Assembly: GCA_020891255.1 (NCBI GenBank)
Contig: BQFW01000006.1
Coordinates: 1,116,001-1,180,000 of the forward strand
Reading direction: 5' to 3'
Origin: Entomortierella parvispora E1425
Taxonomy: Eukaryota > Fungi > Mortierellomycota
DNA length: 64,000 bases
Shown: piece after piece, positions 1,928-59,185 of the stretch
Position numbering within the stretch: position 1 is the stretch's first letter
Layout of the letters: each line of letters opens with the position of its first letter
The notes under the pieces: generated by a model
Told to the model about the DNA's origin: nothing
Seen by the model: only the letters and a program-made list of their open reading frames with translations
Databases searched by the model: none
Position numbers and translations under genes: made by a program

Positions 1928-2303
1928 ATATCCCCCTCGCTGCCCTTTCCAAATAAATTAAAGAATGACCAAAAATGAAAAAAAAAAAAAAAGATCGCCA
2001 CCAACCAACCATTCTTTCAGGGGGTCACAGTTTCGCTTGTGTTCTTGTTCTTGAAGACATGCAGCTTGACATTTCTTTCTTTCATTGCCATCTCTCTCAT
2101 CCAGGACCAGAAGCAGGACAAGGTCGGGAAAGGACGAGGCGCAGGAACAGGACACCCGGCCCACGCCACGACAACTGAATAGCTGACAACTGTGCCCCAC
2201 GACTACGTTCTCTACTGAGCCCAGCTCTCGTCTACCCTCCTTCCTCCCACTGTTCTGAAAGACTGGGCGTAAAAACTAAAAAAGTCATCGCCCTTCAATC
2301 GCC

Positions 2304-4089: not shown

Positions 4090-6382
4090 ATGTTCTCTAT
4101 TCCTGGCTTCAATGTCGGCAGTCTCGTCGTCGAGGCACCCAAGGAACAACTGAAGAAGCGGAAACACGAGTCTGATACCACGACCATCGCCTCGTCGTCT
4201 TCCATCACCACCACAACCACCACCGCCAGTTTGACCCCCGCAGCGTCCACCTCCGCCTCGACCACGACCTCTTCATCTTCTGCAGGAGCCATCCTCCCCA
4301 TCGCCGCCTCTACTTCCAACGCACCCTTCTCCAAAAAGTTCAAGAAGGAACCCGTGTTCGAGAAGAGAGCGCCTTCAGAGCCCAAGCTTGGCTGGGGCTG
4401 GATTCCTGAACCCGTGCCTTTGAAGGAGCGTGCGACCTGGAACCAGTCCACCAAGGCCCTTCGCAAGGCCAAGGCAGAGGAGGAGAAGGCCAAGAGAGAG
4501 AAGGCTATTGAGGAAAAGAAGAACCTTGTGAGCTCCATTAATGCTCCCTCGACCGCTGTCGAGTTGTTGTTGAACGGCTCCGTGGACATGAAGGACATTG
4601 CCACGATCGGTAACAAGAAGAAGGCAGATCAGGACACGGAAAAGTCAGAGGAGGGCAGTGCTGGAGCCAAGAAGCGTAACAAACGCCTGGAGAGAAAGAT
4701 CAAGAGAGCTGCTTATATTGCCGCCTTGGAGGCCAAGGAGAAGAGCAACAGCGTTGCTGCCGTGGACAGTGATGTGACCATGACCGATGCGACCCAAGTG
4801 GAGGTTGCTGAAGAAAAGGCGACCGAGGGAGTTGAGGCCGAGGTGGCCGCAGAGACTGGAGATGGTGTCAAGAAGCCAAAGAAGAAGCAGCAGATGCCCA
4901 AGACCCCCTTGAGCCCCGAACTCGCAAAGTTGACAAACAAGGAGAGGCGCATGTTGAAGCAGCTCCAGAAGAAGCAGGCTGAGGAAGGCGTGGACCCATT
5001 GGCAAAGCCAACCCCTGCTGTGGCTGAGACGACACCAAAGGCACCCAAGGAGAAGAAGGAGAAGAAGGAAAAGAAGGCTCAGCAGGATACCAAGCCTGTG
5101 GAGCAGACCAAGGCCGCTCCTGCTGAAAAGGCTACCAAGTCAACAGTGTCGAAGAAGGCCACCGCTGCCCCTACCCAGGAGAAGAAGGCGGACAAGGCAG
5201 ACAATGTGACCTCAAAGAAGCAGCAGCAGCTTGCCAAGGAGAGAGAAAAGTTGCTCGAGGTAAAAAAGAGATCCTACCCAGGAATGCAGTTCTTTTTACA
5301 CCGGGCTTGTTCACTTAACCCCTTGTTTTTATTTCTCTGTAGGCCTTGTCTCGAACTAACAACGCTTTGGAAGAATTGCAAAAGTCTTTGGGAGATGGCG
5401 AGGACGATGCACCCATGGCCAAGGCCGATGTCCAATCCGCAGTTCAAGGAAAGAAGAGCAAGAAGGAGAAGAAGGCCGCAGCAACCACACCAGCACCTGC
5501 TGCCCCAGTAGCATCAGCATCGCAGACAAAGCAGCCAAAGTTGACTAAGCTTCAGGAGCAGATGAAGAAAACTCTTGCTGGTGGCAAGTTCCGATTCTTG
5601 AACGAGCAGCTTTACACCACAACAGGCGAGGAGGCCTTTGAGCTTTTCCAGTCCAAGCCCGAGCTCTTTGATGAATACCACGAGGGATTCCGTTCCCAGG
5701 TCGAGCTGTGGCCCCAGAACCCTGTGGACATTTTCATTTCTCAATTGAGACCCATGTCCAAGGATACTGTGATTGCTGATTTGGGATGTGGAGATGCGCA
5801 GATTTCAGCCGAGTTGCCCAAGCACAACGTGTTGTCGTTTGATCTGGTGGCTAAGAACGAGCGTGTCACAGCCTGCGATATTGCTCACTTGCCATTGGCA
5901 GACAACTCTGTGGATGTCGCCATCTTCTGCCTGAGCTTGATGGGCACGGATTTCTTGAAGTTCTTGAGGGAAGCTTACCGCGTTTTGAAGCCCAAGTGAG
6001 TGTTGTGATGCACAGAGAGTGATTGATGGTTCCATTTTCGCGTGTGGAAAATATTTGATCTAACCGCCGTCGAACTTGTTTTTTTTTTTAATCTTGCAAT
6101 AGCGGTCAGCTCAAGATCTCAGAAGTCATCAGTCGATTCACAGATGTCGATGCGTTCGTGGATGCGCTCAAGCAGTTGGGCTTTGAGCTCAAGAACTCGG
6201 ATTCGTCCAACAAGATGTTCATCATGTTTGACTTTATCAAGCCCGATCAGAGCGCAGCTGGTGGCAAGAAAGGCAAGAAGTCGAGCAAGAAGCAGGCACC
6301 CAAGGAGGATCCCCAGCAGGTCGACCTTGAGAGTCTGGATGGACCCAGCCTGTTGAAGCCCTGCATCTACAAGAGGAGGTAG
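4090..6382 (+). CDS. RRP8: 25S rRNA (adenine-N1) methyltransferase Rrp8 / nucleomethylin
   Basis: Exons 4090-5259, 5343-5995 and 6103-6382 joined by GT-AG introns in frame. Motifs KFRFLNEQLYT, FDEYHEGFRSQV..WP.NPVD, IADLGCGDA, FCLSLMGTD, and C-terminal LKPCIYKRR. Confidence 0.93.
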
Positions 6383-6495
6383 TCCAGTTAGTTTGTCCAT
6401 AGTATCTTCATTTTAAACACCAAAAAAACATTCATCATTTTTGCATCGAATTTGCACCAGGCCTTTCTCAAGGGTTGCGCCACTAAAAGAAAGTT

Positions 6496-6504
6496 TAAAA
6501 AAAG
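6496..6504. repeat. Left 9-bp target-site duplication TAAAAAAAG
   Basis: Identical to 14100-14108 and directly abuts the TIR. A 10-bp reading (TAAAAAAAGG) is possible if the terminal base is mismatched. Confidence 0.85.
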
Positions 6505-7525
6505 GAAGCTCTGAACCCAGCCCCTCTTTGCTCACTCCTTCACTTCAGAGGGGCTGGGCGCAAATCTCACCCTTTCCTATGGATGACCCAAAATAATTTT
6601 TTCGTCCAAAAAAGGAAAAAAAATTCTCTGATAAATAGTGTAATTTAAAAACTTTAAATAAATTCACTCTAATAATAATAAAATAGTGAGAGTAATGCCA
6701 GCCATGCAGCCATGCCATCGCTCGTCGCCCGGCTTGAATGGGGTTAATTTCTTCCATTTTTTCATTTTCAATGCCACCACTTTCTTTCATAAACCCCGCG
6801 TTCCGATCTTGCATTCAGCTCCTGCCACCTCTTCTTTATACCCTTCATCTGATTAAATGACAAAGATGGCAAGCAAAAGACCAATCGAGCAGAGGTGAGG
6901 AGACGCGTCTCGGGTGTCCATGATGCTCAGAGTCGCCCACGCGTCCATCTGCTCTATTTTTCTTCATCTCTTCATATTTTCTGTTGTAGTCATGATGCTC
7001 TTAGCAAATCTGATCAAGATATCCCGGGAACGCCGAGAAGATCGCGTAGCACCAAGGTGAGTAGCTTGATGTGGTGCCTGGTGGCCTCTTCCTGGTGTGG
7101 CCTCTTCTAACTCTGTGATTTACAATAGGGTGAGGGACGATTTCGTCTTGATTCCCCAGGTGCTCCTCCGCGAACCCCGCAAACAACACAAACCCCACGA
7201 GCACCACGAGCACCACGAACTCCACGAACCCCGCGCACCTCACAAACCTTACAAACGCCAAGATTCATACAGTCACCAATTGTGGCCAACCAAGTATGAA
7301 AAAAATCGTTAAAAAATATGTGCTGCTCGCGTTTTCTTTTCTAACAGATGTATCCACCTCCTCCCATTCATATCGATTAGGGAACTACCAATGGTTCTGG
7401 TGCTACCGATATGGCCCAACCTTTACCCTTTGTCATGGAGGCACAGGCTCTTTCTCCGACTTCTCAGGCTGCGTACATTGGAGGATCAACGCAATTCAAC
7501 ATTGGAAAAAATTCGACGCCACCCA
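6505..7525 (+). repeat. Left terminal inverted repeat (1021 bp)
   Basis: Reverse complement of 13080-14099. ORF-track entries are mirrored exactly (6545..6814- = 13790..14059+; 7001..7261- = 13344..13604+). The only difference found is a T5 vs T4 run at ~6957-6961. Confidence 0.95.
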
Positions 7526-10500
7526 ACATTGGAAAAGAGTCGCCGCGACCCAGCATTGGAGATGAATCACCGCGACCCAAGCATGCGTCAGAGGAGTCTC
7601 TGCTCGATCCTTTCTGTGACAACACTGATGGAGAGCCATTCGATAGCCCATTCTGGCTTCGGAGATTAGGAAGTAATCGAACAGAGACGCCGATGATATG
7701 GGTTTCTGGGAACGATTACATGAGGACCCCCACAAGAAAAAACTCGCGACGATCTAGGAATCTGAGCACCCCTCAGTTCGCGTAAGCATGAGATACCCCA
7801 ACCTGCCTACCCTGTCGCAACTTTAGTTGCCCCCAGGTTTACGCAAATTTCTAACATGCAGTGAAATTCAGTGATAGGATTAGGACTTTAACGGCCGACA
7901 TGGAGGAGCAGTTCAACTCATCGACACTGCAGGTAAATTCAGCACATGGTTTCGAAAACATCCTTATCGTAATTTATGAATTACCTCTCAAGTGAATTAC
8001 GAATTACGTATAGATGTGCATGCCCGATTCCCCCACACTCAGAGCGACCAATGGAGAGGATCGAATGCCCGGATCAACAAGGAAGCCGCATGTATGTGAA
8101 GACCGGTTGTCCAAAGAAACCAGCAATATGTCACTCCCACAGGCGTCTAACAATTATTTTTCTTTTTAGCATTCCTCTACCCACAAAGTTGCAATGATTC
8201 TTAACTACATCAGGGAACAACAGCTTTCACTTCCCGCCTTCTTCGAGAAGCTGTTTAACTCTCAAGATGAAAACATCAAGCGCTGGACTCATCAATTCTA
8301 TCACAAAGACGGTCCTCGTCGCGTTATCAAAATTTGGAGCCAAAAGTTACGCAAGATCAAAGAATGGGATGCCCCATTTGTGAACAGCGCTGTAGACGTC
8401 GTTGTCTCAAGGACTAAACGGGAGCTTGATCGCCTCAAGAACGGCGTCGTAGGTGACGATGGCCCACACCCAGCCTACCGATTCCCGCACAATAGAATGT
8501 CGGAGGAAAATATCGATAAGATCCTCAGGAACGGGTTTCTCGACTCTTACGCCGGCGAAGCTTCTTTTTTGACACGACTTTTGGACGGCATGCTTAGCAA
8601 GGGAAATGGTACGAACAGTGGCGATGGTAGCACCAGAGTAAACGAAGGCAACAACAACGGCAACGACAGTGAGAACGACACCGAGAGCAACAGCGACAAC
8701 AGCGACAATAGCGGCGACAACGACATCGACAGCAACGGCGATAACACCGTCAACAACGGCAGTGACAACATCGGCAACAATGATGAAGAAACTGTGGGAA
8801 GCGCTACACCTGCTCGCAGGCGCGGTCGAAAACCCAGCTCTGTTCGTGGCTGCATCTCTGCTATGCTCATGTTCTTGAGATCCCAGCAATGCAATGCTTT
8901 TCAGATGGTAATGGGCATCTATCTTCACTGCCTGGGAGCTCCCAGACGAGTTTTAGAGACTTTGTCGGCTCTTGGACTTTGCGTGTCATATGATCAGATT
9001 CACAGGGCATTGAAGGCCTTGACCAAAGACGCACAGGAGAGGGTGAAGGTGGCAGTCCTCAACAACGACTTTTACATTGTATACGACAACATCAACATTG
9101 CCACAAGGCACCATCACCAGAGAGTAGGAAAAAGAGACACGTTCGACAACGGCACAGCTGCTACCGTGATTCTGATTCCCGACAGCTCAAATCTCGGGAG
9201 CTCCAGGAGTGCTGAAATACCTCGATCATCCCCAATGGTTTGCTTCAGAGTGGACAGGCCAGAGCCAAGCGCCAGCATTTTTTTCCCCACAAGCACCGAC
9301 CGCACCATGACTAGGGCTGCCTGCCGCACACATCTGTCGACTGCCATTTCGCAGTTTTTGCCTCGATCACCCAGTGTTTGCGTGATTCCCATGCCGGCCA
9401 TTGACGTACTGAAGGTTGTTAAGACGAAAACTTTTCCATTGCCAACCATGAAGATCGATGAGTCGACTATTGCCGGAAATCTCGCAGTGCTGGAAAACAT
9501 AACAAAGATAGATCTCGGCTTAAGCGATGAATGGTTCAGCAAGACCACCAGGGACATCATAGTGGCCGGTGATCAGATGACTGTCTCTAGACTTTTATCT
9601 CTCAAGGTACACCGCATGGTTGAGTCGGATCCATTCGGCAGTCTTGGTTGGGTACATCCTACGTTTCAGCTCTTCCATCTCCAAATGACACTTTGCTCCA
9701 CGATCTACAAGACACATCTTGGCGCCGATGCCAATACCCCAGGCTCACTTGCATCATTCATTTCCCTATTGGCCAGTAAAGGCTTTAACACGGATAAACC
9801 GGAGTACAAGCCAACCAGTGAACTGCTGAAGATTGTTTTCGACGCAATGTCAATGGTACTCTGGGAAGATCTTCATACCTCAGTGGAGTCTGACATGACA
9901 AGATTCGTTGATCTTGTCATTTACGCCATAGCTAGTCTGCAGCATGCCAATCCCTTGCTCAATGGCCGGCCCTGCACTCCAGCAGATATCAATGCTCTTC
10001 TCTTCCTCCGAGACATGATCGTTTTCATCGAACTCTCTGCTGCTATTAAGGCTGGCGATCTTGGGCGGATAAGATGTGTGCTACCAACCGTGGCATTGAT
10101 GATGCACGGCGGAGGCAATTCCAAATATGCCCTTGAGCTACTACGATTTTCTCCACGGCATGCGCCACCTGTGGACGCGTGAATGGGAACACAGGGTCCT
10201 TTCAAGCATGCTGGTGAACCCTAAAGGCATTCCTCAAGCATGGATGCCAACGGACATGTACCAAGAAATCATCAACTTCCTCCTCAAAGCCACTCATGCA
10301 GCGAAAGGGCCAAACGCAAGCTGGGACTATCTTCGCGAACAAATCTCAACAAACGTCGAGATATTTCAAACCATTGCACGTAATTTCGAACGGGAGATAG
10401 AAACCAAGTACAACAGCACTGCTCACAAAAAACCATCCACGAAAGAGGATGTTGAGCTTGTCAGAGACAATCTCCAGTTCTGTGGAATCCTTTGGGCATC

Positions 10501-10666
10501 CAAGCAAGACACTCGGCCTTCTCCATCCGTGGTAGTTGACCTTCAAACTGTTGGCGCGCACAAAATGGCAGAGAGTGCTATAGCATGTTTTCTCAGAAAA
10601 AGCGATAGCTACGATACTGTGGATATGGAGGAAGTCGAGGCCAACGACCATGTTGTAGCTGAATGA
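6866..10666 (+). CDS. Academ-type DDE transposase (DUF6589-like), ~1098 aa after correcting one frameshift
   Basis: Modelled exons 6866-6894, 6990-7056, 7129-7293, 7381-7781, 7872-7932, 8014-8091 and 8170-10666. Candidate catalytic motifs YIVYDNIN, IVAGDQMT, FHLQM and TDMYQEIIN. A +1 T in TTTT at 10147-10150 splits ORFs 8194..10182 and 10127..10666. The core ORF is solid, while the 5' exons are inferred from splice signals. Confidence 0.8.
7498..7578 (+). repeat. 27-bp (9-aa) minisatellite, 3 units, at the inner edge of the left TIR
   Basis: Units encode NIGKNSTPP / NIGKESPRP / SIGDESPRP. Confidence 0.8.
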
Positions 10667-10832
10667 TATTTTATGACAATAATAATACTAACTAAAGAAG
10701 AATGAATGAATGGGACCTGGGCTCGTGCGATGTTAAATGGCCCGGCCGGCTGTAAATGTTTGGTTGTGCAGGGTCATCAGATGCAAGCAGTGACTCCATC
10801 TCCTTGTCATCTTGGCTCGGTCAATTGATGGG

Positions 10833-13738
10833 CTATTCTTCGACTACCAAGGAATTTTGATCATTTTTCGTACTTTCTATCTCGCCCAGGGCTTTCGCCA
10901 CAACCTCAGCGATCATTTCAAAATGATCGCAATCCACTGGCACAAAATCACAGCTGTCAGCTATCAACCTCACCATTTCAGTAGTGGTGGCCGCAAAGAG
11001 CTTGTAGCACAACCTTGCGAGTACTTTATCGGGCAAAACGCAAAGCTCGAAGTCCACGAAGGACACTTCTTCTCCTGTCCATTTTTTGCACTCGTTCTTC
11101 CTCCACTCCAATAACCTGTTCCTCCCTACATCCTGATCTTTGTCCGCGCTCTTCCCCTTTGGTATAGTCAGTTCGGGCCCAATTTGACCAGTAAGTTCGG
11201 TCGTCTTGCGGCGACAAGACTCACCGAGACATACATCACAACATTTGGTACGAGAGGATATTTTGTTCCCTAGATATTCATCCACCACATGCCACCGACA
11301 TTTCCTCCGACTGTTGTCCTTGTCCTTTTCCTTGTCCTTTTCCTTGTCCTTGTCCTTGTCAATTGGGGGGCAACGAAATTTAAGATGTCAGGTCTCTTGT
11401 TGTATTTCCTGCTGGTAGTTGGAGGCGCCAAGAGGATCCCAAAGCCTTTAGTTCCAGGACCCCTCGCTGCTCGACCGAACCTCTGCACAAGACTCGTCAA
11501 ATCGTGAGGCAGACTTCATATCATTGAAAATATCTTGAAGTAAGTAAGATCGTCTCTCATTTCATCCGCATTGTCCAACCTTAGTTACGTTTCAACTTAC
11601 TCATATTGGAACACAGTGATAACATCTGAGATATCGCATCCCATGCCGCAGGCATCAGTAGCCAACAGGACATCAATCTCGCTATTAATGAACTTGAGCA
11701 GGACTTTATCCTTGGAAGAACTAAGGCGGGTTGAGAAAAATGCGTCCATTCGCAGATCAGGCCTCAATGGCCTTAACTTGTCCTGTACATCTCTGAGAAG
11801 TGCGATGCTGTCAAAATAGACAATCGTCTTTGTATTGTCCAGCAACTTCGCCAGTTGTCTGACTCGATTCCTTAGTGAAAAGGTATGAACTTCGAGCTGG
11901 ATGTTATCACGAATGTCATCCACACGAATGACATGAACGGTGGACGAGGCGAGAAAGACGCTATTCTTGATTTCCTGGAGCGAATCGGGTGGGAGGGTTG
12001 CAGTCAGGCCTACGATCGGCACCCCAGGTACCTTACCACGCAATGATCCAATTTGCGAATAATACGGCCGAAAATCTTTCCATTTATCTACACAGTGGAC
12101 TTCATCTACGACGATGGAGCATAGTTGACTTTTCCAATACTTATTGTTCCAAAGGTCCTGAACCTTGCATGCAGTAGATCCTTTCCCGAAAATGACTTCT
12201 GGCGACATGAACACAGCTCTGTAATGTCCCTCCTTAACTAATTTAATGTCACTGTCGTTAACTCGATTGCCGTTGTAGGTCGAGAGTAGCAAACAAGTGA
12301 CATCCTTTTCTTTGAGTTTCTAGAGTATTAACACAGGGTCGCATTGCGCGATATGTTAGAAAAAGTATACCTGTTAGACTGGTATATTGTATGCTGGCAT
12401 ACCTTTATCTGATCCTGCATCAGGGCAATCAACGGCGAAATGACGACCGTAATCTTGTCCTTCCACATCACCATTGGCAGAGAAAATACAAGTGTTTTTC
12501 CCCACCCGCAGGGCGCAAGCAGTAAGCAATCCTGCTTGTTGTATATATGTTTGACAACACGAAGCTGCTCCTCCTTTGGTGAGTGATGAAAACGCTTTCG
12601 GCAAGCTTGAATAGCCTCTTTACATAATGGATCCTGCAGTATGAAGATTACAGACATATATGCATTTTAATGTGAGAGTTAATGCAAGTCCAGAACATCG
12701 CCATTTCATAATTAAACTCGACTTACCTGGACATCACTCTCGTCTTCGCGTTCATCGCTTTTTTGTATAAACGGTAAAGGTTGGCTAAGAACCGCATTTG
12801 ATGGTGACGAGAATGACTGCAACGGAGAGCCGACAGAATTGGCGGGTGAAGAAGGAGCTGATGACGATGGCTGCATCGATGACCACTTTTTCCTCAAAGG
12901 GGTTCTTACATAATAGTTATCAGAACCCCACGTCATGATTGGTTCTCCATCAGTGTTATCACAGAAAGGATCGAACGTCAACTCCTCCGACGCATTGCTG
13001 GGTCGCGGCGATTCTTCTCCAACATTGGATCGCGTCAAATTCTCTCCAACATTGAGTCGTGGCGGTTCTTCTCCAGTGATGGGTGGCGTCGAATTTTTTC
13101 CAATGTTGAATTGCGTTGATCCTCCAATGTACGCAGCCTGAGAAGTCGGAGAAAGAGCCTGTGCCTCCATGACAAAGGGTAAAGGTTGGGCCATATCGGT
13201 AGCACCAGAACCATTGGTAGTTCCCTAATCGATATGAATGGGAGGAGGTGGATACATCTGTTAGAAAAGAAAACGCGAGCAGCACATATTTTTTAACGAT
13301 TTTTTTCATACTTGGTTGGCCACAATTGGTGACTGTATGAATCTTGGCGTTTGTAAGGTTTGTGAGGTGCGCGGGGTTCGTGGAGTTCGTGGTGCTCGTG
13401 GTGCTCGTGGGGTTTGTGTTGTTTGCGGGGTTCGCGGAGGAGCACCTGGGGAATCAAGACGAAATCGTCCCTCACCCTATTGTAAATCACAGAGTTAGAA
13501 GAGGCCACACCAGGAAGAGGCCACCAGGCACCACATCAAGCTACTCACCTTGGTGCTACGCGATCTTCTCGGCGTTCCCGGGATATCTTGATCAGATTTG
13601 CTAAGAGCATCATGACTACAACAGAAAATATGAAGAGATGAAGAAAATAGAGCAGATGGACGCGTGGGCGACTCTGAGCATCATGGACACCCGAGACGCG
13701 TCTCCTCACCTCTGCTCGATTGGTCTTTTGCTTGCCAT
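10833..13738 (-). CDS. Transposon-encoded RecQ-like SF2 helicase, ~796 aa after correcting one frameshift
   Basis: Modelled exons 13738-13710, 13615-13549, 13476-13312, 13224-12727, 12633-12403, 12319-11601 and 11513-10833. Motifs I APCGWGKT, Ia SPLIALMQDQ, II DEVH, aromatic loop WKDFRPYY, III LTAT, V ATDACGMG, VI QRFGRAAR, and RQC-like Zn motif CRW...CCDVC. A 1-nt deficit falls in the G6 run at 11365-11370. Confidence 0.85.
13000..13107 (-). repeat. 27-bp (9-aa) minisatellite, 4 units, at the inner edge of the right TIR
   Basis: Units encode NIGKNSTPP / ITGEEPPRL / NVGENLTRS / NVGEESPRP. Confidence 0.75.
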
Positions 13739-14099
13739 CTTTGTCATTTAATCAGATGAAGGGTATAAAGAAGAGGTGGCAGGAGCTGAATGCAAGATCG
13801 GAACGCGGGGTTTATGAAAGAAAGTGGTGGCATTGAAAATGAAAAAATGGAAGAAATTAACCCCATTCAAGCCGGGCGACGAGCGATGGCATGGCTGCAT
13901 GGCTGGCATTACTCTCACTATTTTATTATTATTAGAGTGAATTTATTTAAAGTTTTTAAATTACACTATTTATCAGAGAATTTTTTTTCCTTTTTTGGAC
14001 GAAAAAATTATTTTGGGTCATCCATAGGAAAGGGTGAGATTTGCGCCCAGCCCCTCTGAAGTGAAGGAGTGAGCAAAGAGGGGCTGGGTTCAGAGCTTC
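13080..14099 (-). repeat. Right terminal inverted repeat (1020 bp)
   Basis: Reverse complement of 6505-7525. Confidence 0.95.
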
Positions 14100-14108
14100 T
14101 AAAAAAAG
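14100..14108. repeat. Right 9-bp target-site duplication TAAAAAAAG
   Basis: Identical to 6496-6504. Confidence 0.85.
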
Positions 14109-14303
14109 GTCCAGCAGGTCCCGTCCAAGGTGCGGATTCACATCTTTTTCCATTCAGACAGCTGCATTCCTTTTGTTTTGTTTTGTTTTGTCTGCTCTTC
14201 CTCTCCTCACTTCGTTGCTCTACCCCATTCCTCTACCCCATTCCTTTTTTGTTACCCAGAAACCGTTGGTTGCTTTCTTACCATATCTATCTTGACGCTA
14301 AAC

Positions 14304-18935: not shown

Positions 18936-19478
18936 GTCAACTTCAAGACACTTGTAGTCTGAGATTACGGCCGAGAATAACTGTGCTAGGAAGAGTCGCT
19001 GCTATTTCTCTGGGTAGGTGAGTGATGAATAGCGGGGCTTCAGGAAGAATTGGGGCAGGGGTGGGGCCAATGTAGACGATTTAAGTATGCTTTCAGCGGA
19101 CAGATCGGCGGTACCTTGGTCCGATACTATCGCCAGATATGGATGTTGGAGGATTACAGCAGGTGGAGTACGGTGGCATAGTCCGGAACATCAACCTGTA
19201 GGCGTCCTTGTGCTAGTTCGAGGTTCAAAGTCGGATAATACCGCATCCACATATACGGGGATCGGGTCTCCCTGAAAGTGGGAAGATGAGGATACCAATT
19301 CTAATTATTTATGGCCAAAAAAAAAAAAAAAAAAAACCAGAATAAAATGTGCGCCACCAAAATCCACAAGACTGCTTTTCTCTGCCTTTGAACAACAATC
19401 ACTGCTGCTGTGCTCAAAGCATTCCTTTGCCTCATTCCTCTTCATTCGCTTATATTGCGCGCATCCAGTGTGCGTGTC

Positions 19479-25134: not shown

Positions 25135-25434
25135 GATGGGAAGTTGGCAAAAAAGGATGTTCAAAAATCCGCTGCTGCTGTTTTGTTATGGACAGTTGCT
25201 GGTCCCGTGACCTGCCTCCTCAGCCACCGAGATCGCTGTGCCGCCCCTTAACGCGATTTCGAGGGTCCCTGTTGGATGTGCCTTTTGCTCGCACTCCGCT
25301 CCTTTTGACTTCTTCCGCCACCAAAAGGTAAAAAAAGAGAAGAGGCTCCTCCCAATCCTTCCGCTCCTTCCTCTCATTCTCTCATTGCTTGACATCCATC
25401 CTCTCCTGTGTCTCCATCCTCTCATCAGCTCACA

Positions 25435-35260: not shown

Positions 35261-37801
35261 CTACTGGGTCTTGTCCGTCTCCTTCTCCTTCTCGATGTCA
35301 AGAGACACTATACTACTCGTCCCGGATGAGGCACCAGCGGCGCCACCAATGGTACTAGAGCTGCTGTTGTTGCCATGCCCGACCGCCTCCAAAATCTCCT
35401 CCTTGTCGCCGTAGACGTTCTCGACGCGATGGGAAGTGGCAGGGATGGTCGATGCTTCTTCCAGATCCAGGGGTGCACCGCCCTCTTCTGGGAACTGATC
35501 GGGGTCTCTGTTGGCTGCAAAGAGGACAACAGCGAGGATGCCAACGCCGCCCATGACACCATAGGCATAGAAGGCAGAGCTGTAACCCTCCATCAAGGCC
35601 AGATCGTCACCGACGGCAGGTGTGTGGGCCTCTGCAATGATGTTGGCAATGGCCAAGCCAATCGGGGCACCCATCTGGATTCCGACGTTGTACACTTTTG
35701 AAGAAGGCAAAAAAAAAAAAAAAAGTGTTAACTACAGATTCCGAAATGACACGACTGTTAGGTTCAGTTGCCCCACAAACACGGATCGTCTATCTTACCT
35801 GCACCGACGACACCTTGATCCTCATCAGCGGCATCAGCGACGGCGTTGACCTGGCAACACATCCAAGTAGGGGAGAGGCCACAAAAGTTGACAATCAAGG
35901 CTGGGAAGGCCCAGTGCCAGTAAGTCGTGTTGGGGGAGCACTGAGCAAAGAGGACACTGGAAACAATGATAAAGACCAGGCCGACAATCATGATGAACTT
36001 TGTCCTAGTGATGGCAAACAACCGAGTAACGGTGTAGAGACCAAACATCAAACCGACACCATGGACGATATAACAACAGGCCGTGATCAGGGCGTTGAAG
36101 TGCATCACGTTCTGGAAGGTCAAGGACGAATAAAAGATCATGGTGTTGTAGGTAGCGGTCAAGCACACAATGATGATGATGGAACTGGCGAACCGACGGG
36201 ACTTCCAGATGTGAAAGGGCATGATGGGGTACTCGATCTTGGATTCAATAATCACAAAGGCGATCAAAAAAGCGATACCAACGGCAAAGGGGGCCAAAGT
36301 CTGGGCAGCGGCCCAGCCTGAGGTCGTGGACTCTGTGAGGTAATAGATGATGGCAATGATGCCGACCGTGAAGCAAGCGGCACCACCATAGTCGATACGG
36401 AGATCCACAGGCTTGCCTGTCAGGGTCGAGATGCGGTTCTTGTCGGGCTGATAATCAGGAATCACCAAGAATCCGGCAAAGGAGAGAGCAAAGGAGAGGA
36501 TTGCGGTCAGGTAAAAGATCCAGGACCAACCAATGGTCGCGTCAAGGACACCGCCGAGCAAGACACCGATGGTTTGACTACAAAGAGAAAAAAAAATGAA
36601 GCAAGCAAGATGAAATTGGATCCAACGAGTTAGATTCCAGGCCCTTCTTTGTTACGGTGGTTGCGATCTGCTGCAGGCGTGTTGCAGGCGATCCATGTGG
36701 CTTTCCCTTTTCATACTGCATCCACCTACCCAGTAATGGCTGCACCACTGAACACGGAAAGAGCAAATGTACGCTCAGGACCTTGACGATAACTGGTCGT
36801 CAACAACGCGAGAGCCGATGGACTAAAAAAGGAATACAAAGAAAAAAAAAAGTTTAGGCCAACAACGTTTACGTGCCTAGCAGCCTAGCAAAAAGAACTG
36901 TGCGCCATCGTGGGGAAAAAAGTGAGGATAGTCATACATTGTGAATCCAGCACCAGCTCCTTCCATGGCACGAGCAACAGACATGAAGATTGGACTTCTG
37001 GCAAAGCCGCACACGAGGGCCCAAATAGCGAACCAAGAGGTACCTGAATGTTGTCATGAAAGTGTTAGTTTTTATCGGACTACTCATTCCGCGGAGCAAG
37101 GGGGCAATGAACAGCTATGCACTTTCAATAGAACAACGTAGGAGGCAATGCTTACCAAGTAAAAAGATACGCTTGTGGCCAAAGAGATCACCCTGAGTGG
37201 CGAACAGAGAAAGGAAAAAAGATGGAAGAGTCATAAGGAACTGTGGCTAACAGGATCTTCCCATTTTTCTCTCGCAGTAACAGGAGCATTTTTTTCATTT
37301 CTTTTTTTTGGGACGGGTAACTTACCATGCGACCTCCAACGAGCAAAAACGCGGCGTATGTGAGAGCGTAGGCGCTCACGCACCTACAACATAGGAGGAC
37401 CCACGCACAGGAGATGCAGAACAGGCACGTTAGATGTCAAAGCTCAAATTGCAAAAAAAAGAGGAGGAAGACACAAGGGACATTGCATGCGTTTTTATGA
37501 ACAGATGATGGCCTGCTTCTTTCATGGTCGAGATAAAAATATCACCCCACGGGACTCACCATTGAAGCTGATTAGGGTGGTATCCAACATCTCGGAGGAT
37601 GGAAGGCAATGCAATAGTAATGGAGGCCACATTGATGATGTCGAGCATGGCGGCCATCGATACCAAGAACAGGAGGAGACCCTTGATTTCGCGCAGTCGT
37701 CTGAACCAAGGTAGGGCATTCCTGATCGAGGAAGGCTTTGAGTTTGGTTCTGGAGTGGTTACTGTAGACTCGACTACAGACTCGTGGGCGGTATCCGACA
37801 T
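35261..37801 (-). CDS. MFS transporter, DHA2/EmrB-QacA-like (14-TM type)
   Basis: Multi-exon. Motifs AAMLDIINVASITIAL, YALTYAAFLLVGGRM, IGWSWIFY and LRIDYGGA, with many TM helices. Confidence 0.85.
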
Positions 37802-57255: not shown

Positions 57256-59185
57256 ATGTCAAAGTTTCAGACCTCTATCCACGAGTACCTGGAAACACTC
57301 CCATTACAGACATTCAACCGACTTTACCAGAAACCTGCAACATGTCTAGCGGTCTTTCGGTATGTGTCTGTACTGCAAAGCTCATAGTCTTTCCTGTTAT
57401 TGTTTGGAGAGATTGACTACAGGGAGAAATGTGGCGTGAATGACCCATTAACGTCTCTGTGTCTACCGTTTGAAGACTTTTGCCACCATTAGGGAAACAA
57501 ATAATCATGTCCAGTCTTTACGTGGATCCGCCTATTGCTGTCTCGGATATGAAGCTCTGGTTCAAGGGCAGTGCAGGAGAGATGTGCGTATACTATGAGA
57601 GACTTAATACAACATTAGGATCTGGATACCTTCTTATAAATGTTTTTCTGACTGATCTGTGCATTTATTTTTTCTTTTGTAGAAAGCACACAGAAGCAAT
57701 GCAACGACTGAAGGCCTTGCATATCTTTGAGGAAGTTCGGGGGAAATACGCCATGAATGCCACATTTCTGGAACAGTTTAGGAATGCTCTGACTGGAGGG
57801 TAAGAGGCTATGATCATGTAAAAGTCATTGCACAATTTCATTTTCTTTGCAACGTACTCATATTTTGTCCTTTATTGTTGTAGTGGCAACTCGCAAAGCT
57901 TTGGGCTGGCTACATCAACACCAGACAAATACCATGTGGATATCCACTTCCTGGACGATTATGCCACAAAGCAATGGGAGGCGATTCTGCACTTTATGGT
58001 CGGCACAACTGAAGGTCGACCTCCATGCAAAGGTGTTTTGAACTTGCTCGGACGCAGTGGACTGATGACAGGTGGGGCTGACAATGGTGGTGGAGGAGGC
58101 GATCAGATGGATGCACGGGATTTTGCGAGTCAAATGGCGCGACAGGATTTCGGTGTTCCCAAAATTACACACAAGGGATTTCAGTTCTTGTTGCAAGATA
58201 TCAATACCCAGGTCTGGGCTTTTCTGCTCCAGTACTTGAACATGGCAGAGAGCTTGAACATGGATTTGGTGGAGGTGTTGACGTTTTTCTTCCAGTTGGG
58301 ATCATTGGAGCTCGGCAAGGATTATTCATCCGAAAATCTGACCCCAACACAAACACACCTTTTGGAGGATTTGAAGGCGTACGGCATTGTGTATCAGCGC
58401 AAGCGAGGCAGTCGACGATATTATCCTACAAGACTGGCTACGACATTGACATCAGGTACGCCAGTCATGTTAGGATCACATACGAACGCCACCAAGATTG
58501 CTGCAGCCGCTGCAGCTAAGAAAGCAGAAGAAGAAGAGGAGGACGATCATGGCTTCATTGTCTTGGAGACCAACTACAGGATTTATGCATATACAGGTAA
58601 GGGGGCATGCGAGTCTTGATAATAGTATGAAGGCGATAGTCTTTATTGACTGGTTGTTGTTTGTCTTTTCTTTTAGATTCACCATTGCAAATTGCAGTCT
58701 TGAACCTTTTCGTCCACTTGAGAGATCGATTCCCCAACATGGTGACAGGAGTAGTGACGCGCGACAGTATTCGAAGGGCATTATCCAAAGGCATTACGGC
58801 AGATCAGATTATCACCTATTTGACAGCGCATGCGCATGCTCAAATGCGGAAGCACTCCCCTATCTTGCCGCTTACAGTGGTGGACCAGATTCGACTGTGG
58901 GAGATTGAAAAGAACCGACTGAGACCAGTTCCCTCCTGGTTGTATTCACAGTTCAGTCGTCAGCAGGACTTTGAAAGCACTCTGGAGTATGCAAGCGAGT
59001 TGGATGTGGTGCTGTGGTCGAACCAGAAGAGGCGCATGCTGTGTATCACGGCAGAGGGACATACCGCTGTTGGAGCCTATGTTCGCAAACTGATCAGTCG
59101 GCACAAGGAACTGCAGGCGCAGCAGGCACAACAGTCAAGTCCACACACCCACCATTCGCCGCATGTCTCTTCTGTTGCATCATGA
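57256..59185 (+). CDS. TFB2: TFIIH subunit Tfb2/p52 (GTF2H4)
   Basis: Multi-exon. Motifs LYQKPATCLAVFR, ITHKGFQFLLQD, RRYYPTRLATTL, IVLETNYRIYAYT, PNMVTGVVTRDSIRRAL and TVVDQIRLWEIE. Confidence 0.93.

What the first reader, a model, noticed from the sequence alone, without database searches (positions are those of the whole stretch)
6496..14108. Complete, apparently young AcademH-type transposon with very long (~1 kb) TIRs and an intact TSD
The sequence shows a 7595-bp element, 1021/1020-bp TIRs differing by a single detected indel, a perfect 9-bp TSD (TAAAAAAAG), and convergent transposase and RecQ-like helicase genes whose stops are only ~166 bp apart (10666 and 10833). Helicase-bearing Academ elements with 9-10-bp TSDs are established (Kojima 2020), but the role of the helicase in transposition is, to my knowledge, uncharacterised. 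Near-perfect TIRs and TSD suggest recent insertion or ongoing TIR homogenisation.
Basis: partly seen in the sequence, partly recalled or inferred. Interest (0 to 1): 0.75.

Follow-up and report, generated by a model that had tools for sequence, protein, structure and literature searches.

The report
Young helicase-carrying AcademH-type fungal transposon
This is one of nine almost identical copies of a 7.6-kb jumping gene in the soil fungus Entomortierella parvispora that carries a cutting enzyme and a RecQ-type DNA-unwinding enzyme; both genes start inside its 1-kb mirror-image ends, and it usually lands 9 bases from a fixed host DNA word.

Summary
Window 6505-14099 is a 7595-bp element with 1021/1020-bp inverted ends that differ by one T-run indel. 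It is flanked by a perfect 9-bp duplication (TAAAAAAAG), and its two inward-reading genes stop 166 bp apart. It is no fold-back artefact. The genome (Entomortierella parvispora E1425) holds nine copies at different loci, eight with perfect 9-bp duplications, and they differ almost only by single-base homopolymer indels.

The AcademH reading fits every feature I could test: a DDE/RNase H-fold transposase (Pfam DUF6589), a RecQ-family helicase, 9-bp duplications and no XPG nuclease. I could not compare it with reference Academ transposases.

"Complete" needs a caveat. As assembled, this copy has two frame breaks in the transposase and one in the helicase. They are probably unpolished Nanopore errors.

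- The ends are coding, so both proteins begin with the same 138 amino acids.
- Seven of nine copies sit exactly 9 bp from the host word TTGGTGGCG (zero or one mismatch).
- Arm identity stops abruptly next to diverged paralogous coding sequence, so the arms were homogenised or re-duplicated recently.

This scan had already reported the element, the shared exons and the target word from other copies. I re-tested them here. I rate it a new variant of a known kind.

The parts
6478..6486 (-). Host target word, one-mismatch variant (reads TTAGTGGCG on the minus strand), separated from the TSD by a 9-bp spacer (6487-6495)
   Evidence: the same word, with zero or one mismatch, sits at this exact offset in 7 of 9 copies; the word is about 6-fold enriched in the genome.
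6496..6504 (.). Left target-site duplication TAAAAAAAG
6505..7525 (+). Left terminal inverted repeat, 1021 bp. The outer 352 bp are non-coding (terminus plus presumed promoter and 5'UTR). The rest holds exons 1-3 and the first 144 nt of exon 4.
6507..6567 (.). Subterminal palindrome inside the TIR (21-nt arms, 19-nt loop), mirrored at 14037-14097
   Evidence: I9, I10
6857..6894 (+). Transposase exon 1 (start codon at 6857), inside the TIR
   Evidence: GenBank model P0001 mapped onto the window; hand model
6990..7056 (+). Transposase exon 2, inside the TIR
7129..7293 (+). Transposase exon 3, inside the TIR
7381..7782 (+). Transposase exon 4. Codons up to 7524 are shared with the helicase (end of the common 138 aa). 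Beyond that it is a diverged paralogue of helicase exon 4.
7873..7932 (+). Transposase exon 5
8014..8090 (+). Transposase exon 6. The C-run at 8029-8033 is C5 here and C6 in the copy behind the GenBank model, so the frame shifts.
8188..10666 (+). Transposase main exon (start approximate; stop at 10664-10666). It holds the DUF6589 catalytic domain and is split in this copy by an extra T at 10147.
9085..9087 (+). Predicted catalytic Asp 1 (motif YDNIN)
   Evidence: Near-invariant column in 60 homologues; lies on the first strand of the RNase H fold in the model
9571..9573 (+). Predicted catalytic Asp 2 (motif GDQ)
   Evidence: Invariant column
10265..10267 (+). Predicted catalytic Glu (motif QE)
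   Evidence: Near-invariant column
10667..10832 (.). 166-bp spacer between the two convergent stop codons
10833..11513 (-). Helicase last exon (RecQ motif VI, Cys-rich zinc-type motif, C-terminal domain). The C/G run at 11359-11364 is one base shorter than in copy L026, whose continuous frame matches relatives L028-L030.
11601..12319 (-). Helicase exon 6 (DEAH box, motif III, Helicase_C)
   Evidence: (best solved relatives are WRN, RecQ, BLM, RECQ5 and RECQ1)
12403..12633 (-). Helicase exon 5 (Walker A, RecQ motif Ia)
12727..13224 (-). Helicase exon 4. The first 48 codons (13224-13081) are shared with the transposase.
13312..13476 (-). Helicase exon 3, inside the TIR
13549..13615 (-). Helicase exon 2, inside the TIR
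13710..13747 (-). Helicase exon 1 (start codon at 13747), inside the TIR
12999..13106 (.). Four tandem 27-bp units (9-aa coding repeats) across the inner TIR edge. The left side has two units, at 7486-7539.
   Evidence: D1, D2
13080..14099 (-). Right terminal inverted repeat, 1020 bp
14100..14108 (.). Right target-site duplication TAAAAAAAG

Best explanation
Window 6505-14099 is one insertion of an autonomous class II DNA transposon of the helicase-encoding Academ lineage (AcademH type) in Entomortierella parvispora E1425. It belongs to a nine-copy family that spread very recently. Shown: the element has identical 1-kb inverted ends and a 9-bp target duplication. It encodes an RNase H-fold DDE transposase (DUF6589) and a RecQ-family helicase, read inward from the two ends. 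Each end carries the non-coding terminus, an upstream region, a start codon and three and a half exons, so both proteins begin with the same 138 residues. Inferred: transposase bound at the termini cuts the element out and joins it to target DNA cut with a 9-bp stagger. Integration is steered to a point 9 bp from the host word TTGGTGGCG, either by a DNA-binding part of the element's proteins or by a host factor bound to the word. The two identical ends act as one promoter used twice, which gives co-ordinated expression. The common N-terminus may give both enzymes the same localisation or the same partner. The RecQ-type helicase most likely handles DNA structures formed by the long inverted ends, or channels repair of the excision gap into non-crossover copying. 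Such copying would restore the donor copy and keep the two arms identical.
For: Anatomy.
Nine copies at distinct loci, eight with perfect 9-bp TSDs.
Youth: only 21 variable alignment columns among nine 7.6-kb copies, nearly all 1-nt homopolymer indels.
Transposase: Pfam DUF6589, E 9e-59 and 9e-26 for the two halves. D, D and E columns are conserved in 60 homologues. The AlphaFold model has pLDDT 90.4. Its nearest folds are Hermes (Z 10.8), Tn5 (9.3), retroviral integrases (8.6), P element (8.3) and RAG1 (7.7).
Helicase: DEAD and Helicase_C domains, and the best solved relatives are all RecQ family.
Shared exons: the GenBank model EMPS_07069 (P0001), made by AUGUSTUS with the authors' transcript sequences (from HISAT-mapped RNA-seq) supplied as its cDNA file (PMC8759367), maps to TIR exons on both arms for residues 1-138. 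Past the arms the two genes stay in frame, with an in-frame 27-bp indel and a conserved peptide. In soil relative L028 the contig-end inverted repeats carry one ORF that continues into the helicase.
Target word: it sits at exactly +9 in 7 of 9 copies (4 exact). The chance of 4 or more exact hits is about 7e-16. It is absent at that offset in the 10 insertions of two sister families.
Architecture recurs: two more families in this genome pair DUF6589 with a convergent helicase; 8 of their 10 insertions have perfect 9-bp TSDs.
AcademH is defined by a helicase and 9-10-bp TSDs (PMC10045372, citing Kojima 2020) and is reported from Mucoromycota (PMC10799480).
Against: No reference Academ transposase was available, so clade membership rests on architecture, TSD length and exclusion of other superfamilies. 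As assembled, this copy has three frame breaks, and no single copy is intact in both genes under the GenBank-type model. If those indels are real, the family may be decaying rather than active. The N-terminal 138 residues are low-complexity and poorly conserved in Podila homologues. No excision footprint or empty site was seen, so cut-and-paste is inferred from the enzyme type. The roles given to the helicase and the shared N-terminus are inference only.
Confidence: 0.8

Rival explanations
1. It is a helicase-carrying DDE transposon, but DUF6589 is not the Academ transposase. The element would then belong to a separate, unnamed superfamily that merely shares the 9-bp TSD and a helicase with AcademH.
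For: No direct comparison with Academ references was possible. Pfam calls the domain a family of unknown function. Fold searches place it only generally among DDE enzymes with an insertion domain.
Against: The defining AcademH combination is fully present and recurs in three families here. AcademH is reported from Mucoromycota and Basidiomycota, the same taxa where DUF6589 is abundant. Academ is among the few superfamilies reported for Mortierella, and the others listed there have Pfam models that did not match.
Confidence: 0.12
2. The family multiplies by a replicative or repair-coupled route rather than by simple cut-and-paste. The RecQ-type helicase would drive strand displacement or synthesis-dependent copying, so that the donor is retained and one arm can template the other.
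For: Nine near-identical full copies exist with no deletion derivatives, MITEs or solo ends. The arms are identical over 1021 bp, introns included. The adjoining paralogous coding stretch has 14 synonymous and 28 non-synonymous codon differences in 68 codons.
Against: The catalytic fold is closest to cut-and-paste enzymes (Hermes, Tn5, P element). Copy gain by ordinary gap repair after excision explains the same data. There is no direct evidence for any intermediate.
Confidence: 0.25
3. The apparent target-word preference is indirect. The element prefers a class of open or nucleosome-free intergenic DNA in which TTGGTGGCG happens to be common, and does not read the word itself.
For: The word is about 6-fold over-represented in the genome, so it is probably a host regulatory site. 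This insertion lies between two genes, 113 bp past the RRP8-like stop codon.
Against: Regional preference cannot explain an exact 9-bp spacing and a fixed word orientation in 7 of 9 insertions. The sister families do not show it.
Confidence: 0.1
4. The inverted repeat is an assembly fold-back or a collapsed duplication, not a mobile element.
For: The assembly is Nanopore-based, and long inverted repeats can be created by chimeric reads.
Against: Nine loci on five contigs have unique flanks and their own TSDs. Related elements with inverted ends occur in independent soil metagenome contigs.
Confidence: 0.01

Closest known systems
AcademH (helicase-encoding lineage of the Academ DNA transposon superfamily; Kojima 2020, Mobile DNA 11:15)
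   Same: It has a DDE transposase plus a separate helicase gene, TIRs and 9-bp TSDs. It occurs at low copy number in fungi, including Mucoromycota. It has no XPG nuclease.
   Different: The TIRs are very long (1 kb) and contain the start codon and first exons of both genes. Insertion lies at a fixed 9-bp offset from a host 9-mer. I could not read the original paper, so I cannot say whether either feature was noted there.
MuDR/Mutator of maize
   Same: It makes 9-bp TSDs, has long TIRs, and has two convergently transcribed genes whose promoters lie in the two TIRs.
   Different: The transposase here has no MULE or MuDR domain. The second gene is a RecQ-type helicase, not mudrB. Here the TIRs carry coding exons as well as promoters.
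Tn7 with TnsD (attTn7 targeting)
   Same: Insertion occurs at a fixed distance from a recognised DNA sequence that lies outside the duplicated target bases.
   Different: Tn7 is bacterial, uses a dedicated target selector and an AAA+ regulator, and has a single chromosomal site. Here the word has about 1,900 genomic copies and the recognising factor is unknown.
hAT (Hermes) and P element transposases
   Same: They are the best structural matches: an RNase H-like core with a large all-helical insertion before the catalytic Glu.
   Different: There is no sequence-level or Pfam match. hAT and P elements make 8-bp TSDs. Neither carries a helicase.
RecQ-family helicases (WRN, BLM, bacterial RecQ)
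   Same: The helicase core motifs match, including the DEAH box and the RecQ-type motif Ia. A Cys-rich segment follows the core at the position of the RecQ zinc-binding region.
   Different: No RQC or HRDC domain was detected. It has a transposon-specific N-terminus shared with the transposase and a C-terminal domain conserved only among related elements.

Membership tests
AcademH | Target-site duplication of 9 or 10 bp | tested here: met
   The TSD is 9 bp in this copy and in 8 of 9 family copies; one has 7 bp. Definition as quoted in PMC10045372.
AcademH | Encodes a helicase in addition to the transposase | tested here: met
   DEAD and Helicase_C exons lie on the minus strand. They are of the RecQ family by comparison with solved structures.
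AcademH | Transposase groups with Academ transposases in a phylogeny or profile comparison | not testable with these tools
   No Repbase or Academ reference sequences are reachable. Kojima 2020 and Yuan & Wessler 2011 are not held. Support is indirect: taxon range and exclusion of other superfamilies.
AcademH | DDE/RNase H-like catalytic core | tested here: met
   D, D and E columns are conserved. A confident model matches Hermes, Tn5, integrases, P element and RAG1.
AcademH | No XPG nuclease (the AcademX marker) | tested here: met
   No XPG hit in any ORF or exon of the element scanned, nor in the eight long homologues scanned.
Mutator/MULE | MULE-type transposase domain | tested here: not met
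   Pfam finds only DUF6589.
Kolobok (KolobokH) | TTAA 4-bp target duplication | tested here: not met
   The TSDs are 9 bp and of varied sequence.
hAT | 8-bp TSD and hAT dimerisation domain | tested here: not met
   The TSDs are 9 bp. No hAT Pfam domain was found. The only link is a fold-level resemblance to Hermes.
RecQ helicase family (for the second gene) | SF2 core with RecQ-type motifs, followed by a zinc-binding segment | tested here: met
   All strong PDB matches are RecQ family, with E down to 9e-16. The motifs are visible in the translations. A Cys-rich segment is conserved in relatives.
RecQ helicase family (for the second gene) | RQC winged-helix and HRDC domains | tested here: inconclusive
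   No Pfam hit in the C-terminal exon. I made no structure prediction for it.

The most novel reading that the evidence does not exclude
This is a eukaryotic DDE transposon whose integration is sequence-guided: it inserts at a fixed 9-bp offset, in a fixed orientation, from the host 9-mer TTGGTGGCG. Its inverted ends double as a twice-used gene head that gives the transposase and a RecQ helicase one common N-terminal module. That module, or the region just after it, could tether both enzymes to the same DNA site or partner, and the helicase could keep the 1-kb arms identical through non-crossover repair.
Probability: 0.4. Interest if true: 0.8.

Novelty: new variant of a known kind. Interest (0 to 1): 0.6.

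Why it matters
AcademH is one of the least studied DNA transposon groups. No one knows what its helicase does, and no active copy has been studied at the bench. This family offers a nearly uniform set of nine fresh insertions in a culturable fungus with public DNA and RNA reads. The target word is clear enough to test by integration-site sequencing. The gene layout, with coding TIRs and a shared N-terminus, makes specific predictions for mutagenesis. A cut-and-paste element that integrates at a fixed distance from a short word would also interest people who build insertion tools. The main limit on novelty is that the superfamily is already described, and this scan had already reported the same family from other copies.

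Tried and rejected
1. Kojima 2020 (by DOI and PMC id) and Yuan & Wessler 2011 are not held. No supplements are held for Muszewska 2017. So I made no reference-based Academ test.
I therefore did no look-up of the annotated helicase protein, neighbouring gene calls or transcript assemblies.
3. My first alignment of the nine copies looked 30% divergent. The identical ends hide orientation; after flipping seven copies the differences fell to 21 columns.
4. I looked for MITEs, solo TIRs and deletion derivatives with the full arm and with the outer 160 bp. I found only the 18 arms of the nine copies.
5. I tested for tRNA or small-RNA gene targeting of the Dada type. There are no tRNA genes within 1 kb of any copy.
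6. I looked for a link to AcademX through XPG fusions among long DUF6589 homologues and found none. One apparent transposase-helicase fusion in Actinomortierella is probably a merged gene model.
7. The ESM Atlas returned only DUF6589 clusters.
8. A wide alignment was too divergent for the metagenome scan. A narrower one gave five loci.
9. Copy L027 has the same small change in both arms. I considered this as direct evidence of arm-to-arm conversion. I set it aside because the site is an indel hotspot in several copies.
10. A near-match to the target word lies at the inner TIR edge (7517-7525). This is compatible with chance.
I redid the exon mapping from stored files only.
12. I searched the spliced gene models exon by exon, by reference. 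I did not submit a joined protein to any tool.
Full report
OBSERVATION. The repeat finder gives two abutting inverted-repeat blocks: 6505-6960/13644-14099 at 100% and 6958-7580/13025-13647 at 97%. A gapped alignment shows that they are one arm of 1021 vs 1020 nt, with a single T-run indel near 6958/13647. The nine bases TAAAAAAAG directly flank both ends, at 6496-6504 and 14100-14108. The element is 7595 bp. The inward-reading frames stop at 10666 (+) and 10833 (-), 166 bp apart. Every number in the finding is confirmed.

NOT AN ARTEFACT; COPY NUMBER AND AGE. The 1021-bp arm matches 18 places in the window's own 38.9-Mb assembly. They form nine pairs about 7.6 kb apart on five contigs. I fetched all nine with 1-kb flanks. 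Each has unique flanks. Eight have a perfect 9-bp TSD of unrelated sequence, and one (L027) has 7 matching bases. Because the ends are identical, orientation must be read from the interior. After orienting, the nine copies differ at only 21 alignment columns. Nearly all of these are single-base length changes in short homopolymers. These indels fail the four-gamete test against each other (for example the sites at 8828 and 10147 show all four combinations). This is what random consensus errors produce and what inheritance along a copy tree does not. The best transposase homologue is EMPS_07069 of Entomortierella parvispora, at 100% identity. That genome was assembled from Nanopore reads and polished with Nanopolish and Pilon (PMC8759367). 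Short-read polishing works poorly inside nine identical 7.6-kb repeats, so residual homopolymer errors are expected there. True substitutions between copies are close to zero, so the burst is very recent. No MITEs, solo ends or deletion derivatives were found.

IS THIS COPY COMPLETE? Not as assembled. An extra T at 10147 splits the DUF6589 domain between ORFs 8194-10182 and 10127-10666, and the Pfam profile runs on without a gap (positions 8-319, then 318-410). Only the copy on contig 7 (L024) has the uninterrupted 831-codon exon. The C-run at 8029-8033 is C5 here and C6 in the copy that underlies the GenBank model. In the helicase, the run at 11359-11364 is G6 (as read on the + strand) in eight copies and G7 in L026. 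Only G7 gives one continuous last exon, and three related elements from soil metagenomes have that continuous frame. No copy is intact at all three sites. I read this as assembly noise and not decay, but only the raw reads can decide.

THE TWO ENZYMES. The plus-strand gene carries Pfam DUF6589. The family is large: 2426 representative clusters at E up to 0.001. The members I looked up come from Mortierellaceae and Agaricomycetes. In an alignment of 60 homologues the conserved columns include YDNIN, GDQ and QE. These correspond to window 9085-9087, 9571-9573 and 10265-10267. AlphaFold2 on that alignment gives a confident model, with mean pLDDT 90.4 and pTM 0.91. Foldseek ranks Hermes, P element, RAG1, Transib and ISCth4 first, with weak E-values. 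The independent all-against-representatives search gives Hermes Z 10.8 (298 residues aligned), Tn5 9.3, retroviral integrase cores 8.6, P element 8.3 (346 aligned) and RAG1 7.7 (360 aligned). The three conserved acidic residues sit where an RNase H-fold transposase has them: on strand 1, just after strand 4, and on a helix that follows a large all-helical insertion. So the protein is a DDE transposase of the insertion-domain type.

The minus-strand gene has DEAD and Helicase_C domains. Its largest exon finds only RecQ-family proteins among solved structures, namely WRN, RecQ, BLM, RECQ5 and RECQ1, with E down to 9e-16. The translations show a RecQ-type motif Ia, a DEAH box and motif VI. A Cys-rich stretch follows where RecQ has its zinc site, and it is conserved in relatives. 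'RecQ-like' is correct.

THE ENDS ARE CODING. I noticed this before consulting earlier notes; three notes of this scan report the same on other copies. Reading inward from either end there is an ATG (6857; mirror 13747). Then come three short GT-AG introns in phase and an open frame that crosses the inner edge of the arm. The GenBank model P0001 was predicted by AUGUSTUS with the authors' transcript sequences, derived from HISAT-mapped RNA-seq, supplied as its cDNA file. It uses exactly these exons. Residues 1-138 map to both arms. Beyond the arm edge the two genes stay homologous and in frame for about 68 codons, with an in-frame 27-bp repeat-unit difference and a conserved peptide, and then become unrelated. 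In the soil relative L028 (69% transposase identity) the contig ends are 137-nt inverted repeats. These repeats carry one open frame, and on one side it continues into the helicase. The head is low-complexity, rich in Pro, Thr and Arg, and poorly conserved in Podila. That suits a disordered localisation or interaction segment better than a folded domain.

ARM IDENTITY ENDS ABRUPTLY. The arms are identical over 1021 bp, including three introns and 352 bp of upstream sequence. The next 68 aligned codons show 26 identical, 14 synonymous and 28 non-synonymous codons. Neutral sites inside the arms should have diverged as much as those just outside. Therefore the arms were homogenised, or one was recopied from the other, long after the original duplication. 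The edge lies in a tandem array of 27-bp units.

TARGET CHOICE. In 7 of 9 insertions the word TTGGTGGCG lies exactly 9 bp beyond the TSD, always pointing away from the element, on either side whatever the internal orientation. Four are exact and three, including this copy at 6478-6486, have one mismatch. The word occurs 1863 times in the genome, against 313 for the reversed control. It occurs 6 times in the window, against 0.43 expected. It is therefore a real host word, probably a regulatory site. There are no tRNA genes nearby.

SISTER FAMILIES AS CONTROLS. The Pfam model finds further DUF6589 loci in the genome. They resolve into family B and family C:
- Family B has seven copies of 6.25 kb with 553-bp arms at 100% identity.
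- Family C has three copies of 6.89 kb with 259-bp arms.
Both have a convergent helicase. Eight of their ten insertions have perfect 9-bp TSDs; one shows 7 matching bases and one an 8-of-9 match. Their termini are related to family A. None has the word at the +9 offset. So the DUF6589 + helicase + 9-bp package is recurrent, and the word preference is specific to the family studied here. In family B the helicase ATG sits right at the inner edge of the arm. There the arms supply only upstream sequence, as in maize MuDR. Family A has extended the arm into the coding region.

WHAT IT IS. The features quoted for AcademH are a helicase and 9-10-bp TSDs, against 3-4 bp and an XPG nuclease in AcademX (PMC10045372). 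AcademH is reported at low copy number in Basidiomycota, Ascomycota and Mucoromycota (PMC10799480). Academ is among the few superfamilies found in Mortierella (PMC5751038). All testable defining features are met. MULE, Kolobok and hAT are excluded by domain content or TSD. The one untested feature is clade membership of the transposase, because no reference sequences were available.

HOW IT LIKELY WORKS. Shown: the parts and their arrangement, recent multiplication, 9-bp staggered integration, and the position of insertions relative to the word. Inferred from the enzyme class: DDE-catalysed excision and strand transfer by a synaptic complex on the two identical ends. Inferred from the layout: one promoter sequence used twice gives coupled expression of transposase and helicase, and a common head gives both the same localisation or partner. 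Speculative: the RecQ-type helicase removes hairpins or cruciforms formed by the 1-kb inverted ends. Alternatively it steers repair of the excision gap into synthesis-dependent, non-crossover copying. That route would restore the donor, raise copy number and keep the arms identical.

CONTEXT OF THIS INSERTION. It lies 113 bp past the stop (6380-6382) of an RRP8-like methyltransferase gene. It lies about 20 bp before a long open frame that starts at 14130. It is therefore intergenic.

PRIOR WORK IN THIS SCAN. Other copies of this family were already reported, with the same organism, the shared 138-aa head and the target word. I re-derived these independently or re-tested them. My additions are:
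- the copy-by-copy frame-break table, and its likely cause in the assembly method;
- the structural assignment of the transposase;
- the codon-level contrast at the arm edge;
- the two sister families as controls.

NOT DONE. I searched the gene models exon by exon, by reference, and submitted no joined spliced protein.

Noticed in passing
G000 contigs C12, C16, C2, C6, C11, C10 (loci L033-L038, L041): A second young DUF6589 + helicase transposon family: seven copies of 6.25 kb with 553-bp perfect TIRs. Six have 9-bp TSDs and one has 7 bp. The helicase start codon sits at the inner TIR edge.
   Followed up: partly
G000 C2 and C9 (loci L039, L040, L042): A third DUF6589 + helicase family: three copies of 6.89 kb with 259-bp TIRs and 9-bp TSDs. 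One copy (L042) has stop codons in the transposase.
   Followed up: partly
whole genome; window 1996-2004, 2320-2328, 19352-19360, 25316-25324, 35341-35349, 58487-58495: The 9-mer TTGGTGGCG is about 6-fold over-represented in the genome (1863 vs 313 for the reversed control). All six window copies are on the minus strand. It is probably a host regulatory word of unknown binder.
   Followed up: partly
window 7486-7539 and 12999-13106: Tandem 27-bp units that code for 9-aa repeats straddle the inner edge of both TIRs, with two units on the left and four on the right. The edge of arm identity falls inside this array.
   Followed up: partly
window 6507-6567 and 14037-14097: A subterminal palindrome (a 12-bp perfect core, CCCAGCCCCTCT and its complement) lies within the first 63 bp of each end. 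It is a possible paired binding site or hairpin.
   Followed up: no
window 7517-7525 and 13080-13088: A one-mismatch copy of the target word lies exactly at the inner end of each perfect arm. The count of such near-matches in the element is compatible with chance.
   Followed up: partly
L027 (G000 C6:406198-413790) and L036 (G000 C6 near 67100-73350): Two of 19 insertions across the families show only 7 matching flanking bases instead of 9. This could be a variable stagger or a later small change.
   Followed up: no
all nine copies, site equivalent to window 6955-6958 and 13647-13649: The context CTCTATTTTTC is an indel hotspot in several copies and arms. Copy L027 has the same variant in both arms.
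   Followed up: partly
window 5346-6382: An RRP8-like rRNA methyltransferase gene (Pfam Methyltransf_8) ends at 6382, just upstream of the insertion.
   Followed up: partly
P0082 (Actinomortierella ambigua, 8-kb contig): A GenBank protein joins DUF6589 and helicase domains in one chain. Given the convergent layout seen here, it is probably a merged gene model.
   Followed up: no
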